A DNA stretch of 64,000 nt, taken from positions 222,689 to 286,688 of IMG/VR virus record IMGVR_UViG_3300004151_000006; one strand, given 5' to 3'. Shown piece after piece: positions 3,301 to 61,300 of this stretch (position 1 is its first letter; each line of letters starts with the position of its first letter). Both the position numbers and the translations under genes were made by a program. The notes beneath the pieces are model-generated. The model searched no databases. It saw nothing but the letters and a program-made list of their open reading frames with translations, and was not told the origin of the DNA.

Positions 3301-3362
3301 AAATATATATCATCTATGCGAAGACACATAGATGATGATGTCTCGGGGACTCGACATGATCA
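3301..3362 (+). repeat. Promoter-overlapping double inverted-repeat element, copy 1 of 3
   Basis: TATATATCA-TCTATG-CGA; ATCATCTATG/CATAGATGAT and ATGTC/GACAT stems; homologous to 27288-27350 and 61226-61300. Confidence 0.75.
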
Positions 3363-3462
3363 TTTGTGTGAATCAAATCGAATATCATCACATGGTGTGA
3401 TGAATACGATGGGTCATATAACCCAAATACTTTTAGTCTTAAACTTTCTCAGGAGTATACTC

Positions 3463-5607
3463 ATGGCTAAGATCATCTTTCTTATCATGGTGTCAATGTT
3501 GTTAGCAGATCATAGCTTTGGTCAGACCAAAAACAATGATCTCCCCACAGTGGAAGAAGTACAGGATAATATCCAAAGATCTGGTAAGCAGTGGACAGCT
3601 AAACGCAATAGATTCATGGATATGAGTCAGGCTGAGATCGATGCCACACATGGAGCAGATGATTGGTCTACTCTCTCCAGAGATATGGATCTCAAAGGTT
3701 TAGAGGGTTCTCCATATGACAAAGATGTCACTGGTGTCCTCACTGATAATCCCCTTCCATCAGCACATGATTGGAGGAATCATAATGGAAAAGATTATAC
3801 TACTCCAACCAAATATCAATCCAGCTGTGGTGCATGTGTCACATTTGCAACAGTTGCTATATGGGAAACACTCCTTAAGATTCAGTACTTGGATGAAAGA
3901 CCTTCATTCAATCCGGATCTCAGTGAACAGTTTATAGTTTCATGTCCATTACCGAAATCTTGTTTTGGAGTCAATCCAACTTTTACAATACCGGATATGG
4001 TACAAAACGGTACTTATTCGGAGACATACATCCCATACATTGCAAAGCCAGTACCTTGCAGTGAAGTGACAAGCGGTGTTGATCTTACAAAGATTGGGCA
4101 TTATCGTGTTATGAATTATGAACATGTGGTTGTGTATGAACCCGGTGGAGATGATGTGAGTATTGACATGTTAAAACGTATGTTGGTGGAGATTGGACCA
4201 TTTTTCACAGTGATGATGCAATACGATGATTTCTATCTTTATGCGGGTGGAGTATATTCCACAACACCAACTGCGAGTTATCGTGGGCTTCATGCCGTCT
4301 GTGTGATTGGGTATGATGATGCTGAACAATGTTTCATTGTGAAAAATTCATGGGGAGATTGGTGGGGAATAAATGGTTATTTTAAGATAGCCTATTCAGA
4401 AGCTACAAAATTATCCCGTACTACATTTGGCTTAGATACATGGGCATTTTCTGGTGCTGTCATTGATCGTGAAGAACCAGAGCAAGAGATACCCCCAATA
4501 GCCAAAGTCATAAACTTTCCCACAGGTACAATATATGCACATGATCGGGTGTACAATGTAACTTCTGAACCAGCAACTGCAGTATCATTTGCTTTTCGTA
4601 CTGATGGTGGTACCTGGAGTGAACAGATACCCATTTTAGGATCTTTGTGGATCTATGATCCCACTGATGGTCCACATACACTTGAAGTGATTACATGTAG
4701 TGTATCTGGTGCTTGTCAATCTAAAAATGATCCCACTACATATCATTGGATCAATGATACTACACCTCCAGAATTTATCAATATCACCAATCCACCAGCT
4801 GCTATCACTGATGTCACATCTTACGTATTCAATGTCACTGCGAGTGCAGATACTGTAAAATATATGTGGGCATCTGATTTAATAAGTGGCTGGTCTGCTA
4901 TGCTACCAATATCAAATGCAACTATCACTTTAAATGATGTCCCCGATGGTAAACATTATATTATTCTGGTAGCCAGTGATGTAATCGATAATTACAGTGA
5001 GCACACTCGGGTGGAATGGACGGTATCGAGTAAAATCACAGCATTGTTAAGTGATCTCCCAAATATCAAAACTACAGATACTTCAACACGGATCACGGTA
5101 TCTTCTAATTCATCAAAATACATTGGATATCGATATCGTCTTGATGGTAGTATGTGGTCTGCAACTGCAGATAAAGATACAAAGATACAGTTATCTGGGT
5201 TATCAACAGGTGTACATACTCTTGAAGTAATTGCAGTGGGGAGTGACGGTAGTATTCAAGATGAAACTGCTACTTCAATGTATGCTTGGATAATTGAAGA
5301 AGCCGCTGCAGCTGTAGCAGTATTGCAAAATCCACCTGATTCAGTATCTACCGCATCGAAATATCAACTGTATGTTGGTGGGGAAAATACCGTGGCATAT
5401 AAATATTCTATCGATGGTCAACCTTTATCACAGGAGTATGATATCAACACACCTATCAATTTGACACTTTCATCGGGCCTGCACATACTCCGGTTGTCAG
5501 GAAAGAATAATGCTGGTGTATGGCAAGAAAGTTATACCACTAACAGTTGGACAGTCAAACGGTCTACTGTAAACCTTGGTGCAGTCTATCAGCTATTATT
5601 GAATTAA
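3463..5607 (+). CDS. Secreted papain-like (C1A) cysteine protease with C-terminal beta-sandwich repeats
   Basis: AGGAG SD at 3451; signal peptide MAKIIFLIMVSMLL; QSSCGAC, GLHAVCVIGY and KNSWG motifs; repeated YxYxxDG...GxHTLEV modules. Confidence 0.9.
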   Translation: MAKIIFLIMVSMLLADHSFGQTKNNDLPTVEEVQDNIQRSGKQWTAKRNRFMDMSQAEIDATHGADDWSTLSRDMDLKGLEGSPYDKDVTGVLTDNPLPSAHDWRNHNGKDYTTPTKYQSSCGACVTFATVAIWETLLKIQYLDERPSFNPDLSEQFIVSCPLPKSCFGVNPTFTIPDMVQNGTYSETYIPYIAKPVPCSEVTSGVDLTKIGHYRVMNYEHVVVYEPGGDDVSIDMLKRMLVEIGPFFTVMMQYDDFYLYAGGVYSTTPTASYRGLHAVCVIGYDDAEQCFIVKNSWGDWWGINGYFKIAYSEATKLSRTTFGLDTWAFSGAVIDREEPEQEIPPIAKVINFPTGTIYAHDRVYNVTSEPATAVSFAFRTDGGTWSEQIPILGSLWIYDPTDGPHTLEVITCSVSGACQSKNDPTTYHWINDTTPPEFINITNPPAAITDVTSYVFNVTASADTVKYMWASDLISGWSAMLPISNATITLNDVPDGKHYIILVASDVIDNYSEHTRVEWTVSSKITALLSDLPNIKTTDTSTRITVSSNSSKYIGYRYRLDGSMWSATADKDTKIQLSGLSTGVHTLEVIAVGSDGSIQDETATSMYAWIIEEAAAAVAVLQNPPDSVSTASKYQLYVGGENTVAYKYSIDGQPLSQEYDINTPINLTLSSGLHILRLSGKNNAGVWQESYTTNSWTVKRSTVNLGAVYQLLLN

Positions 5608-5617
5608 TCTATGATGA

Positions 5618-5643
5618 CATGGGGGACCATTCGGTCCCCCATG
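5618..5643. terminator. Intergenic hairpin
   Basis: CATGGGGGACC-ATTC-GGTCCCCCATG. Confidence 0.55.
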
Positions 5644-5671
5644 CCCTTACAAATGCTACTCATTTTTTTAT

Positions 5672-5692
5672 AAATATATATCATAAAATTGA
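5672..5692 (+). promoter_or_regulatory. Putative early promoter
   Basis: TATATATCA-TAAAAT-TGA. Confidence 0.65.
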
Positions 5693-5739
5693 ATGTGGAT
5701 TAAAATCTGATTAACACTTTAACAATGAGGTAAAATGTT

Positions 5740-5964
5740 TTGGCTGGAAATTTATGTTCATTAATTGCTGTGACTGGTAAAGGCCGTGGTCCCCGTCAAC
5801 CTGAAGTCAGGCCCGACACTGGACGTGAAGCTGTCATCTCCTTACATCAGCGTAAGGGGATGGTTACCTGCAAAGTGTGTAAGACACGATTTCCTCGATT
5901 TAAGATGAAGCATGGGTTATGCCCATTCTGTCATCACGACCGGAAACAGAAGATTGAGGATTGA
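5740..5964 (+). CDS. Small Zn-ribbon protein
   Basis: CKVC...CPFC; lies between a promoter and a hairpin; start uncertain. Confidence 0.55.
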   Translation: MAGNLCSLIAVTGKGRGPRQPEVRPDTGREAVISLHQRKGMVTCKVCKTRFPRFKMKHGLCPFCHHDRKQKIED

Positions 5965-5969
5965 TTTTA

Positions 5970-5994
5970 GGGACCTGGGCAATGCCCAGGTCCC
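5970..5994. terminator. Intergenic hairpin
   Basis: GGGACCTGGGC-AAT-GCCCAGGTCCC. Confidence 0.55.
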
Positions 5995-59900: not shown

Positions 59901-59928
59901 TATTTAATTTTAAGGGGGAATTTGAATT

Positions 59929-60480
59929 ATGAAAAAAGCTAAAAGACTTAAGCGACACACATCTAATATTAAACGTAAAAATGAACCTAAAAATAATGTT
60001 TCACAATTTGGAAGATATGTTGATCTCCCAATAGATCCAGAGCTTTTTAATAAATATTTTCTTGAATTGAAATGGGATCAGAAACTTGAAATATTAAAAT
60101 ATTATACTACTGATGAACGAATAGCTGTTCGTGATATCATGATAGTCAATACAGATTTACGTGGTTATGAAACTGAAGAAGAATTAGAAGATTTATCAAA
60201 ATTTATGGAAGGTTTAAATAAAGAGTTTATTCTTTCAGATGTGAAATATTTTTCAAATCCAGAATATCGTGAAGTTGAAATCATGCGATTATTTGCACTG
60301 AATGTTTATCATCATAAAGATTGTGTTAACCTTATTATTAAACAAGGAAAAGCTAGTGCTGAACATTATTTTTCATGGACCTATGATTTACATTCATTTA
60401 TGAATATAGCACTACCGACAGGATTTGATGATTTTGAAAAGAAAGTCATGTCCCATTGGGAGTTAAAAATATTAAAATAA
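59929..60480 (+). CDS. Hypothetical protein
   Basis: 183 aa; basic N-terminus. Confidence 0.7.
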   Translation: MKKAKRLKRHTSNIKRKNEPKNNVSQFGRYVDLPIDPELFNKYFLELKWDQKLEILKYYTTDERIAVRDIMIVNTDLRGYETEEELEDLSKFMEGLNKEFILSDVKYFSNPEYREVEIMRLFALNVYHHKDCVNLIIKQGKASAEHYFSWTYDLHSFMNIALPTGFDDFEKKVMSHWELKILK

Positions 60481-60492
60481 TCGGAGGTTGAT

Positions 60493-60738
60493 GTGGCTGA
60501 GATCAGTTTGTATCATGAAGAGTTGGGTCCCCGTTATAAGGAAATCATTTCTAACAAACTCATTAAATTGGGAGTTTCCAACAACCTTTGGTATTTTAGT
60601 ACTACCCATGGAAGTATTTATTTAAAAGTGGATAACCCAAACTTCCTTAAGGTGATCGAACACTTGAAGGAACTTGGTTTTAAAAAGGATATCAACTATA
60701 CCATCATCTTTGGGCTAAAGGAAAGTTATAGTGGCTGA
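60493..60738 (+). CDS. Hypothetical protein
   Basis: GGAGGT SD; GTG start. Confidence 0.65.
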   Translation: MAEISLYHEELGPRYKEIISNKLIKLGVSNNLWYFSTTHGSIYLKVDNPNFLKVIEHLKELGFKKDINYTIIFGLKESYSG

Positions 60739-60904
60739 TAAAAATCAAGAAGGCTGTGAAATAATCTTTAATCCGGCAGGTGTGCTTAGGCGTGTTACTT
60801 TAGTATCACTAGTTGAAAATCTATTACCTGATGGAACTAAACTTCCTGAGGAGATAAAAGCTGACATCAACAAAGTGGATGATGAAATCATGAAAACCCT
60901 TTGA
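60731..60904 (+). CDS. 57-aa hypothetical protein (not in ORF track)
   Basis: GTG start after AAGGA; fills the gap between neighbours. Confidence 0.5.
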   Translation: MADKNQEGCEIIFNPAGVLRRVTLVSLVENLLPDGTKLPEEIKADINKVDDEIMKTL

Positions 60905-60916
60905 TCGGAGGATATC

Positions 60917-61162
60917 ATGGAAAAGATGACTCATGATGAGTTGGTGGAATTGCTGGGTGAATTGTTTGATGATGAAAGTATCGGTTGTATTGGAGAAACA
61001 ACCCCAAATGGCAATGGTATGTGTACGTGTCCGAGTTGTTCTGCTATTGAAGATCTTAAGCATGAAGGTTGTGGAATGGAACCCATGGGAATGATCATCA
61101 ATCATGATGATGATTGTAAACTGTATAGGTTGTATGCATATGTGAGTGCAAATCGTAAATAG
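60917..61162 (+). CDS. Small Cys/His-containing protein
   Basis: GGAGG SD; CPSC...H...C. Confidence 0.7.
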   Translation: MEKMTHDELVELLGELFDDESIGCIGETTPNGNGMCTCPSCSAIEDLKHEGCGMEPMGMIINHDDDCKLYRLYAYVSANRK

Positions 61163-61168
61163 ATAAAT

Positions 61169-61196
61169 GGCACTGGGACCAAGTGGTCCCAGTGCC
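61169..61196. terminator. Intergenic hairpin
   Basis: GGCACTGGGACCA-AG-TGGTCCCAGTGCC. Confidence 0.55.
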
Positions 61197-61225
61197 CTCA
61201 CACCAATACTCATCTATTTTTTATC

Positions 61226-61300
61226 TATATATCATTTCTTTGAAGACTCAGAAATGATGATACTGATTTCCTCGAAGAGGAAATCATCATTGATCATCAG
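61226..61300 (+). repeat. Promoter-overlapping double inverted-repeat element, copy 3
   Basis: TATATATCA-TTTCTT-TGA; ATCATTTCT/AGAAATGAT; TGATTTCCTC-GAA-GAGGAAATCA. Confidence 0.7.

What the first reader, a model, noticed from the sequence alone, without database searches (positions are those of the whole stretch)
3301..61300. Three-copy covarying inverted-repeat element built into the early promoter
Seen at 3301-3362, 27288-27350 and 61226-61300: the promoter motif TATATATCA-N6-YGA, then AGAC(A/T)CA, then the reverse complement of the promoter's own spacer. The stems are ATCATCTATG/CATAGATGAT, ATCATTTC/GAAATGAT and ATCATTTCT/AGAAATGAT, so changes are compensatory. A second hairpin follows (ATGTC-TCGRGGACTC-GACAT in copies 1 and 2, a cGAAg-loop hairpin in copy 3), and the element looks like degenerate ~25-nt tandem units. 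The downstream genes are unrelated. Inference: if transcription starts at the YGA, the first stem can form only in DNA or between nascent RNA and the non-template strand, suggesting a structural promoter switch. Alternatively it is a small structured RNA or a mobile regulatory cassette.
Basis: partly seen in the sequence, partly recalled or inferred. Interest (0 to 1): 0.68.

Follow-up and report, generated by a model that had tools for sequence, protein, structure and literature searches.

The report
Repeated early-promoter hairpin cassette, jumbo phage
An uncultivated freshwater jumbo phage carries three copies of a short cassette that joins an AR9-type early promoter to tandem hairpins, one of them straddling the predicted transcription start. 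The evidence fits a shuffled regulatory module better than a proven promoter switch.

Summary
The sequence observation holds. Three sites (window 3301-3370, 27289-27350, 61223-61290) share an early promoter, GAAGAC(A/T)CA, an inverted repeat across the promoter spacer, and a second hairpin. They are the only copies in the 286,688-bp phage genome.

The promoter (AAATATATATCAT-N6-G) matches 12 of 13 positions of the experimentally mapped early consensus of Bacillus phage AR9. Transcription therefore most likely starts at G 3320, 27308 and 61242, inside the loop of hairpin 1. The 5' arm of hairpin 1 would not be transcribed.

The repeated unit is a hairpin of about 25-28 nt with a variable stem and a conserved loop (YCGARGACWC). 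The three copies are mosaics of one another.

Covariation amounts to two compensated pairs among three sequences and cannot be tested statistically. The orthologous promoter in a relative (L188) has no hairpins. AR9 and two related phages show no enrichment of start-straddling repeats.

My best reading is a lineage-specific, PeSL-like promoter-leader cassette placed before orphan or acquired genes, giving those early mRNAs a structured 5' leader. A DNA-level promoter switch is neither excluded nor supported. No RNA data exist for this phage.

The parts
3301..3320 (+). Copy 1: early-promoter 13-mer (3301-3313), 6-nt spacer (3314-3319), predicted start G at 3320
   Evidence: The start is placed by the AR9 rule and has not been mapped experimentally.
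3309..3336 (+). Copy 1, unit 1: 10-bp inverted repeat (3309-3318 with 3327-3336). Its 8-nt loop holds the predicted start.
   Evidence: DNA hairpin -7.0 kcal/mol on the top strand, -8.8 on the bottom strand.
3338..3370 (+). Copy 1, unit 2: hairpin 3338-3342 / loop 3343-3352 / 3353-3357. 3359-3370 can also pair with 3325-3336 in RNA (12 pairs, 2 of them G-U).
   Evidence: RNA from near the start: -21.9 kcal/mol, z -4.7; z -5.0, the most structured of 40 early leaders.
3463..5607 (+). Gene served by copy 1: 714-aa papain-family (C1) cysteine peptidase with a hydrophobic, signal-peptide-like N-terminus (by eye). Only cellular (bacterial/archaeal) or unlabelled metagenomic homologues were found.
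27289..27308 (+). Copy 2: 13-mer (27289-27301), spacer, predicted start G at 27308. It abuts the stop codon of the upstream gene with no terminator between.
27297..27324 (+). Copy 2, unit 1: 8-bp inverted repeat (27297-27304 with 27317-27324), 12-nt loop
   Evidence: -4.1 kcal/mol.
27326..27350 (+). Copy 2, unit 2: hairpin 27326-27330 / loop 27331-27340 / 27341-27345, then ATCA at 27347-27350
   Evidence: +13..+44 is 30/32 identical to copy 1.
27368..27763 (+). Gene served by copy 2: 131-aa orphan protein with a hydrophobic N-terminal stretch; GGAGGG Shine-Dalgarno before 27368
61223..61242 (+). Copy 3: 13-mer variant ATCTATATATCAT (61223-61235), spacer, predicted start G at 61242
   Evidence: The promoter and spacer are conserved in the orthologous locus L188.
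61231..61258 (+). Copy 3, unit 1: 9-bp inverted repeat (61231-61239 with 61250-61258), 10-nt loop
   Evidence: -5.3 kcal/mol.
61257..61290 (+). Copy 3, unit 2: 9-bp hairpin 61265-61273 / GAA / 61277-61285, extended by ATGAT 61257-61261 pairing with ATCAT 61286-61290
   Evidence: (leader z -4.1).
61367..62038 (+). Gene served by copy 3: 223-aa orphan protein, followed by the NAD-dependent DNA ligase gene at 62345-63820
3222..3256 (+). G+C-rich terminator-like hairpin followed by a T-rich stretch, about 45 nt upstream of the copy 1 promoter
   Evidence: Read.
61169..61196 (.). 12-bp G+C-rich hairpin just after the last small + strand ORF (stop at 61162) and 27 nt upstream of the copy 3 promoter. 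The scan called it on the - strand, where its T-rich tail lies.

Best explanation
The element is a lineage-specific regulatory cassette of an AR9/phiKZ-type jumbo phage. It consists of a canonical early promoter of the virion-RNA-polymerase type fused to tandem hairpin units of about 25-28 nt.

Each unit has a stem that is free to vary and a conserved purine-rich loop (YCGARGACWC). The first unit overlaps the promoter, so its 5' arm is promoter positions -11 to about -3 and +1 lies in its loop.

Shown:
- the sequence anatomy;
- three copies only in the genome;
- a mosaic relationship between the copies;
- orphan or acquired genes downstream;
- an orthologous promoter in a relative that has no hairpins.

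Inferred:
- Transcription starts at G 3320, 27308 and 61242.
- The RNA then holds only the 3' arm of unit 1 plus all of unit 2.
- The ATGAT of that 3' arm pairs with a downstream ATCA(T) to form one extended hairpin, beginning 6-14 nt from the 5' end.
- This gives these early mRNAs an unusually long, structured leader (60-143 nt, against about 30-50 nt for most other early leaders).
- I take that leader to set mRNA stability, processing or translation.
- The cassette spreads and reshuffles by recombination at the conserved promoter core and the ATGAT/ATCAT repeats, as PeSL cassettes do in T4-type phages.
- On this reading the promoter-straddling stem comes mainly from how units arise: tandem duplication of the promoter-proximal segment, followed by palindrome-perfecting changes. 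It is not an obligatory part of promoter function.
For: Promoter identity:
- 12 of 13 positions match the AR9 early consensus, with G at the same distance.
- All 24 + strand sites with at most 1 mismatch to the 13-mer are followed by G at that distance.
- About 40 sites lie on the + strand, most of them 30-145 nt upstream of a Shine-Dalgarno and start codon.
- One such site drives an RNA-polymerase beta'-like gene.
- A second set of RNA-polymerase beta and beta' genes is present.

Cassette nature:
- Only three copies exist in the genome.
- Copies 1 and 2 are homologous from -22 to +43. Copies 2 and 3 match over -15 to +20 apart from two spacer bases, then become unrelated.
- Unit 2 is a diverged copy of unit 1.
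- Other early promoters share their upstream or downstream flanks in different combinations. Genome 167423 shares its upstream flank with 134550 and its leader with 277391.
- The downstream genes are unrelated orphans or a peptidase with only cellular homologues.
- L188, the 55%-identical orthologue of the copy 3 gene with the ligase gene alongside, keeps the promoter and spacer. Its leader is an ordinary 46 nt with no 3' arm and no unit 2.

RNA leader:
- The leaders of copies 1 and 3 are the most structured of the 40 early leaders, at z -5.0 and -4.1.
- The copy 1 RNA helix contains G-U pairs.

Maintained stems:
- 7 of the 8 differences between copies 1 and 2 fall in the 12 nt of the two inner arms (Fisher p 1.2e-5), and each version remains self-complementary.
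Against: - No transcript data exist. The only public runs holding this phage are four freshwater DNA metagenomes, so the start site and any RNA structure are inferred.
- An RNA-leader role does not explain why the untranscribed 5' arm stays complementary to +8..+17.
- The clustered, compensated differences between copy 1 and copies 2/3 could reflect selection on a DNA-level or read-through structure.
- The copy 2 leader is not unusually structured (z -0.6).
- The RNA basal helix has no covariation: 4 invariant pairs and the rest partly broken.
- No consistent change in ribosome-site accessibility was predicted between start-initiated and read-through RNA.
- Recombination is inferred from mosaicism alone.
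Confidence: 0.45

Rival explanations
1. DNA-level structural promoter element. Once the promoter is melted or supercoiled, the -11..-2 segment pairs with +8..+17 within one strand, or nascent RNA pairs with the non-template -10/spacer. This tunes initiation, escape or re-initiation in a promoter-specific way.
For: - The arms straddle the predicted start, and the 5' arm begins exactly at -11 in all three copies and at genome 41147.
- Every stem-1 pair is Watson-Crick.
- Differences between copies 1 and 2 cluster in the two arms while complementarity is kept.
- Swapping promoters and leaders among 40 sites gives 0.75 repeats of >=8 bp, against 5 observed (0 of 1000 permutations).
- Two unrelated early promoters (genome 41147 with 13 bp, 183322 with 8 bp) have the same geometry.
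Against: - The hairpins are weak, -4 to -9 kcal/mol with loops of 4-12 nt depending on strand. That is poor for extrusion from duplex DNA.
- Three of the five are paralogues.
- Random intergenic windows of this genome carry repeats of >=8 bp 9% of the time, about 3.7 per 40 windows.
- AR9 (23 promoters) and relatives G003 (29) and G005 (14), which use the same promoter type, show no enrichment.
- The orthologous promoter in L188 works with no complementary arm.
- I know of no precedent among multisubunit RNA polymerases (from memory).
Confidence: 0.12
2. Both hairpins act in RNA that reads through from upstream. Only read-through transcripts contain the 5' arm, so unit 1 plus unit 2 form tandem loop-presenting hairpins. 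These would serve as a processing site, a protein-binding site or an insulator, marking read-through RNA as distinct from promoter-initiated RNA.
For: - Copy 2 abuts the upstream stop codon with no terminator, so read-through RNA must exist there.
- Stem 1 is in the predicted minimum-energy fold of read-through RNA for copies 1 and 3 and for genome 41147.
- A conserved loop on variable stems is the usual signature of a hairpin-presented recognition motif.
- The long repeat at genome 41147 contains two G-T positions that would be G-U pairs in RNA.
Against: - Copies 1 and 3 sit 27-45 nt behind strong terminator-like hairpins, which should limit read-through.
- No consistent effect on ribosome-site accessibility was predicted.
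- The loop motif is not dispersed elsewhere in the genome in hairpin contexts.
Confidence: 0.15
3. No function beyond the promoter. The cassette is a recent intragenomic duplication of a promoter-proximal segment, and its quasi-palindromes were perfected by template-switch (hairpin-templated) replication errors.
For: - Only three copies exist, in one genome, with no diverged relatives carrying it.
- The same sequence, with no variants, is seen in four samples.
- Copy 3 unit 2 looks like a 'perfected' palindrome of the unit-1 5' half.
- The orthologue lacks the hairpins.
- Covariation has no statistical power.
Against: - +1..+6 and +13..+43 are almost invariant between copies 1 and 2, while the arms differ at 7 of 12 positions. 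Uniform neutral drift does not predict this.
- Four different stems all keep pairing around a conserved loop.
Confidence: 0.2
4. Leader-peptide or translational attenuator. The ATGATGAT at +13, or the ATG/TTG 6-8 nt after the Shine-Dalgarno-like GAGGA/GGGGA of unit 2, opens a short upstream reading frame. Its translation would remodel the hairpins.
For: - Short frames exist in all three copies. Copy 1 has 22 or 14 codons, copy 3 has 27 or 15, and copy 2 is in frame with the main gene (and my reading).
- Unit 2 contains Shine-Dalgarno-like purine runs.
- The single difference between copies 1 and 2 inside unit 2 is synonymous in that frame (CGG/CGA).
Against: - The copy 3 peptide is not conserved with that of copies 1 and 2.
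- There is no strong Shine-Dalgarno before +13.
- The main-gene ribosome sites are not clearly sequestered.
- One synonymous change carries no weight.
Confidence: 0.08

Closest known systems
Early (virion RNA polymerase) promoters of AR9, phiKZ and phiR1-37 jumbo phages
   Same: - A highly conserved, extended AT-rich element with the start 6 nt downstream.
- The AR9 consensus AAATATATATTAT-(6N)-G+1 differs from this phage's 13-mer at one position.
- Dozens of copies, all co-oriented with the genes.
- The phage encodes split multisubunit RNA-polymerase genes.
   Different: - No start-straddling inverted repeat or tandem hairpin leader is described for AR9, phiKZ or 201phi2-1 in the papers read.
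- My own test on 23 AR9 promoters found no enrichment.
PeSL (promoter-early stem-loop) cassettes of T4-type phages (PMC2839356, PMC4122927)
   Same: [quoted passage not shown]
- They stand before orphan genes in variable regions.
- Copies are chimeric, implying recombination between them.
   Different: - PeSL promoters are sigma-70-like and the stem-loop is a terminator.
- Here the promoter is of the phage-polymerase type.
- The cassette's own hairpins overlap or follow the start and lack a U-tract.
- Separate terminator hairpins do precede copies 1 and 3.
- Mini-circles could not be tested.
Hairpin promoters of coliphage N4 virion RNA polymerase (PMC4496689; details from memory)
   Same: An early promoter of an injected polymerase in which an inverted repeat is part of the promoter region. 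This is the only well-established case of a DNA hairpin as a promoter element.
   Different: - The N4 polymerase is a single-subunit enzyme.
- Its hairpin has a 5-7-bp stem and a 3-nt loop and lies upstream of +1.
- Here the polymerase is multisubunit, the repeat spans +1, the loops are 8-12 nt on the coding strand, and most promoters of the class lack any repeat.
Promoter-proximal cis-acting RNA hairpins (lambda nut boxB, HK022 put) and 5'UTR-derived small RNAs of phage 201phi2-1 (PMC11512511)
   Same: Hairpins placed within the first 100 nt or so of early transcripts. boxB likewise has a conserved purine-rich loop on a stem (from memory). Structured 5' leaders are reported in a phiKZ-like phage.
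   Different: There is no sequence or Rfam relationship, no terminator after the hairpins, and no evidence here of antitermination or premature termination.
Quasi-palindrome (template-switch) mutation, as described for T4 rII (from memory)
   Same: It explains multi-base changes that keep or improve complementarity of two arms without selection. It fits the perfected palindrome in copy 3 unit 2.
   Different: It is a mutational process, not a functional class. It does not explain the near-invariance of the loop and of +13..+43.

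Membership tests
AR9/phiKZ-type virion-RNA-polymerase early promoter | Extended AT-rich 13-nt consensus (AR9: AAATATATATTAT) | tested here: met
   Copies 1 and 2 match 12/13 and copy 3 matches 10/13. Ten exact and 14 one-mismatch sites lie on the + strand of the genome.
AR9/phiKZ-type virion-RNA-polymerase early promoter | Conserved purine start 6 nt downstream of the element | tested here: inconclusive
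   G occupies that position at 24 of 24 + strand sites with <=1 mismatch. The real 5' ends could not be mapped because no RNA runs exist.
AR9/phiKZ-type virion-RNA-polymerase early promoter | Phage encodes its own split multisubunit RNA polymerases (virion and non-virion sets) | tested here: met
   Beta-like genes lie at window 7209-12703 (intron-split) and genome 193835-194665. Beta'-like genes lie at window 30666-32807 and genome about 175465-177070. Which set is packaged was not determined.
AR9/phiKZ-type virion-RNA-polymerase early promoter | Early, protein-synthesis-independent transcription by the injected enzyme | not testable with these tools
   Uncultivated phage; only DNA metagenomes are available.
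PeSL regulatory cassettes (T4-type phages) | [quoted passage not shown] | tested here: met
   Three copies stand before unrelated orphan or acquired genes.
PeSL regulatory cassettes (T4-type phages) | Sigma-70-like promoter, and a stem-loop that is an effective terminator | tested here: not met
   The promoter is of the phage-polymerase type. The cassette hairpins have no U-tract and lie over or after the start. For this reason it is not filed as a PeSL member, only as working like one.
PeSL regulatory cassettes (T4-type phages) | Recombination between copies (chimeric cassettes, mini-circles) | tested here: inconclusive
   Mosaic copies and shared flanks among other promoters are consistent with this. 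Mini-circles could not be tested, and contigs showed no joints.
N4-type hairpin promoter | Short-loop DNA hairpin upstream of +1, recognised by a single-subunit virion polymerase | tested here: not met
   The repeat spans +1 with coding-strand loops of 8-12 nt. The polymerase genes are multisubunit.
Any curated RNA family (Rfam 15) | Covariance-model match | tested here: not met
   No match at the three sites at gathering score or at E<=5. The only real hit in the window is a group I intron.

The most novel reading that the evidence does not exclude
The complementarity between the promoter's own -11..-2 segment and +8..+17 is a selected, promoter-specific switch for a multisubunit virion RNA polymerase. 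It would act either as an intrastrand hairpin that forms once the promoter is melted, or as nascent RNA pairing with the non-template -10/spacer of its own promoter. In either case the variable spacer acts as an address, giving individual early genes their own control. That would be a new principle of promoter regulation in phiKZ/AR9-type phages.
Probability: 0.1. Interest if true: 0.8.

Novelty: new variant of a known kind. Interest (0 to 1): 0.4.

Why it matters
How the virion RNA polymerases of phiKZ/AR9-type jumbo phages recognise and regulate their early promoters is still unknown.

This genome extends the AR9-type early promoter to a distant, uncultivated freshwater lineage. Its best RNA-polymerase matches to cultured phages are only about 24-29% identical.

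It also shows that such promoters can travel with structured leader modules and be reshuffled in front of newly acquired genes. That parallels the PeSL cassettes of T4-type phages, but with a different polymerase system.

If the start-straddling stem proves functional, it would be the first structural promoter element for a multisubunit phage polymerase. If not, the cassette is still a compact natural example of promoter-leader modularity, and a possible part for expression design in jumbo-phage systems.

Tried and rejected
**Diverged copies elsewhere**
- Exact-pattern scans of IMG/VR and of JGI metagenomes returned chance hits or 100%-identical pieces of the same phage.
- Protein-seeded searches in IMG/VR with the peptidase and the RNA-polymerase subunit found no close relatives.

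**Expression and microdiversity**
- Only four DNA runs from freshwater hold the phage, with no RNA runs.
- Contigs laid on window 1-6000 showed no variants, joints or ends.

- I did not build a model. With three sequences, and a unit 2 in copy 3 that is not in register, a model adds nothing beyond the profile search and the pair counts.

**Generality of start-straddling repeats**
- Not found in AR9 or in relatives G003 and G005.
- Three other relatives (G002, G004, G006) do not use this promoter motif.

**Other ideas tested**
- Dimeric operator: ATCAT-N18-ATGAT occurs only at the three copies plus one chance site.
- Dispersed hairpin family with a GARGAC loop: none beyond the cassettes and a weak relative at genome 72815.
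- Transcript-origin sensor that occludes the ribosome site: no consistent predicted difference.
- Replication-origin idea: the GC skew follows gene orientation only and is uninformative.

**Orthologues of flanking genes**
- The peptidase has only cellular (bacterial/archaeal) or unlabelled metagenomic homologues.

**DNA not available**
- The closest RNA-polymerase relative (61% identity) lies on a contig whose DNA could not be served.

Full report
**What the window is**

The window is the last 64 kb (positions 222689-286688) of a 286,688-bp IMG/VR virus record, rated complete. It encodes split, multisubunit RNA-polymerase subunits of the phiKZ/AR9 kind.
- A beta-like gene at 7209-12703 is interrupted by a group I intron at 11174-11494.
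- A beta'-like gene lies at 30666-32807 on the minus strand.
- A second beta-like and a second beta'-like gene lie elsewhere in the genome.

The best matches among cultured phages are only 24-29% identical. Uncultivated relatives reach 61%. The same sequence, with no variants, is present in four freshwater DNA metagenomes. No RNA run holds it.

**Checking the observation**

The three sites read exactly as described.
- The combined motif occurs 3 times against 0.01 expected by chance.
- A profile of the three copies finds only these three in the whole genome.
- Stem 1 is 10, 8 and 9 bp long in copies 1, 2 and 3.
- Hairpin 2 is the same in copies 1 and 2 and different in copy 3.
Unit 2 is a diverged direct copy of unit 1, with significant matches between units within and between copies.
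- What the units share is the loop (YCGARGACWC). The stems differ, yet each stem pairs.

**The promoter and the start**

The 13-mer AAATATATATCAT followed by N6 and G matches the AR9 early promoter consensus AAATATATATTAT-(6N)-G+1. That consensus was defined by dRNA-seq and primer extension. The authors report the same 6-nt distance to the start for phiKZ and phiR1-37 (PMC5312081).

In this genome:
- All 24 + strand sites with at most one mismatch carry G at that position.
- About 40 sites fit a slightly relaxed pattern. All are on the + strand, most of them 30-145 nt upstream of a Shine-Dalgarno and start codon.
- One of them precedes an RNA-polymerase beta'-like gene, as expected if the non-virion enzyme is an early product.

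I therefore place the starts at 3320, 27308 and 61242. This is an inference by homology, not a measurement.

**Is the promoter-straddling repeat more than chance?**

The two controls give different answers.
- *Swap control.* Promoter parts and leaders were swapped among the 40 sites. This gives 0.75 +/- 0.78 perfect repeats of >=8 bp, against 5 observed (0 of 1000 permutations).
- *What the five are.* They are the three copies plus genome 41147 (13 bp, extending to 19 with two G-T positions) and genome 183322 (8 bp).
- *Background control.* Three of the five are paralogues. Random intergenic windows of this genome carry such repeats 9% of the time, mostly terminators, which predicts about 3.7 per 40 windows.
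- *Formal pair counting.* Stem 1 has 6 invariant pairs, 2 pairs changed on both sides and 2 partly broken. In 66 of 500 shuffles the score was at least as high. Three sequences cannot carry a covariation claim.

The stronger signal is the pattern of divergence.
- Copies 1 and 2 are homologous from -22 to +43.
- 7 of their 8 differences lie in the 12 nt of the two inner arms (Fisher p = 1.2e-5).
- +1..+6 is identical, and +13..+43 differs at one position.
- Copies 2 and 3 are identical over -15..+20 apart from two spacer bases, then become unrelated.

So the copies are mosaics: two versions of stem 1, each self-complementary, combined with two versions of unit 2.

**Comparative evidence**

No diverged copy of the cassette was found in IMG/VR or JGI metagenomes. 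One orthologous locus is informative.
- L188 encodes a 55%-identical homologue of the gene behind copy 3, followed by the NAD-dependent ligase gene as in the window.
- It keeps a terminator hairpin and the promoter, including the unusual ATC prefix and a near-identical spacer.
- Its leader is an ordinary 46 nt, with no 3' arm and no unit 2.
- The promoter is therefore older than the hairpin module, and it functions without it in a relative.

I also tested whether start-straddling repeats are a general feature of this promoter class. They are not.
- AR9 (23 promoters): observed equals permuted.
- Relatives G003 (29 sites) and G005 (14 sites), which use the same promoter type: no enrichment.
- G003 has one duplicated promoter-leader pair with a palindromic spacer.

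**What the RNA would look like**

From the predicted starts, each transcript begins with GAAGAC(A/T)CA.
- The ATGAT that forms the end of the 3' arm of stem 1 can pair with a downstream ATCA(T). This encloses unit 2 in one extended hairpin.
- In copy 1 that helix has 12 + 5 pairs, including two G-U pairs.
- In copy 3 it has 5 + 9 pairs with a 3-nt bulge.
- In copy 2 it has 4 + 5 pairs.
- The leaders of copies 1 and 3 are the most structured of the 40 early leaders (z -5.0 and -4.1). Copy 2 is unremarkable at z -0.6.
- The basal helix shows no covariation.
- As DNA, the unit-1 hairpins are weak, -4.1 to -8.8 kcal/mol.
- There is no Rfam match at E<=5.
- Predicted ribosome-site accessibility does not differ consistently between promoter-initiated and read-through RNA.

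**Context**

- Copy 1 serves a 714-aa papain-family peptidase with a signal-peptide-like N-terminus. Its only homologues are cellular (bacterial or archaeal) or unlabelled metagenomic proteins at 39% identity or less, so it looks like an acquired gene.
- Copies 2 and 3 serve orphan proteins.
- The three proteins are unrelated.
- Copies 1 and 3 follow terminator-like hairpins. Copy 2 abuts the upstream stop codon.
- Other early promoters in the genome share either their upstream or their downstream flank with different partners. Promoter-centred shuffling is therefore general in this genome.

**Interpretation**

The best-supported reading is a lineage-specific regulatory cassette: an AR9-type early promoter plus tandem hairpin units. 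It is duplicated and recombined within this genome and placed before accessory genes. It gives those early mRNAs a long, structured leader.

In evolutionary behaviour it resembles the PeSL cassettes of T4-type phages (PMC2839356). It is not a member of that family, because the promoter type and the position and nature of the stem-loops differ.

The promoter-straddling stem is real and appears to be maintained. Whether selection or hairpin-templated mutation maintains it cannot be decided here. Nor can I decide whether it acts in DNA, in read-through RNA, or not at all. I give:
- 0.45 to the cassette/leader explanation;
- 0.20 to a functionless duplication with palindrome perfection;
- 0.15 to a role in read-through RNA;
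- 0.12 to the DNA-level switch;
- 0.08 to a leader-peptide mechanism.

**Verdict**

It is a new variant of a known kind and of moderate interest. The decisive data are 5'-end mapping and stem-mutant transcription assays.

Noticed in passing
window 11174-11494 (between ORFs 7209-11228 and 11489-12703): A group I intron (Rfam RF00028, 64.5 bits) splits an RNA-polymerase beta-like gene. The two ORFs match consecutive parts of the same PHROG family (positions up to 1050, then 1051-1420).
   Followed up: partly
genome 41147-41200 (outside the window; L079:1547-1600): An unrelated early promoter is embedded in a 19-bp inverted repeat (13 perfect pairs, two G-T positions, then 4 more pairs; DNA hairpin -14.2 kcal/mol). 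The inner 8 pairs would form a hairpin flush with the predicted RNA 5' end.
   Followed up: partly
window 6035-6053 and genome 85735, 88864, 134532, 167405: A conserved (A)TGCTGATCAT block lies 8-9 nt upstream of five early-promoter 13-mers. It may be a second promoter element or a second promoter class. Pairs of these sites share identical flanks.
   Followed up: partly
window 3463-5607: A secreted-looking papain-family (C1) cysteine peptidase gene in a jumbo phage, with only cellular (bacterial/archaeal) or unlabelled metagenomic homologues (<=39% identity). It has its own early promoter and a terminator-like hairpin upstream.
   Followed up: partly
window 33764-43048: A 3094-aa open reading frame. 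The equivalent 3172-aa protein on a relative's contig carries a T6SS VgrG3-like C-terminal domain hit.
   Followed up: no
genome 72815-72941 (outside the window): A degenerate relative of the cassette. It has the same promoter with a GAAGAC start, a weak 4-bp repeat around the start, and 55 nt downstream a 4-bp hairpin presenting TCGAAGACGC, followed by TGATC.
   Followed up: partly
genome ends; contig Ga0209800_10000051: The record has a perfect 60-bp terminal inverted repeat. A second public assembly of the same phage is 300,343 bp long, so the true ends and any terminal redundancy are unsettled.
   Followed up: no
G003 positions 47576 and 93561 (IMG/VR relative; L171 and L173): A duplicated early promoter-leader pair. 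Its spacer holds the palindrome ACTTAAGT, which is repeated at +16, so direct and inverted repeats cannot be told apart there.
   Followed up: no
window 60824-61213 (minus strand): This 129-aa minus-strand ORF overlaps three tandem small + strand ORFs (60493-61162) and a hairpin at 61169-61196. It is probably not a gene.
   Followed up: partly
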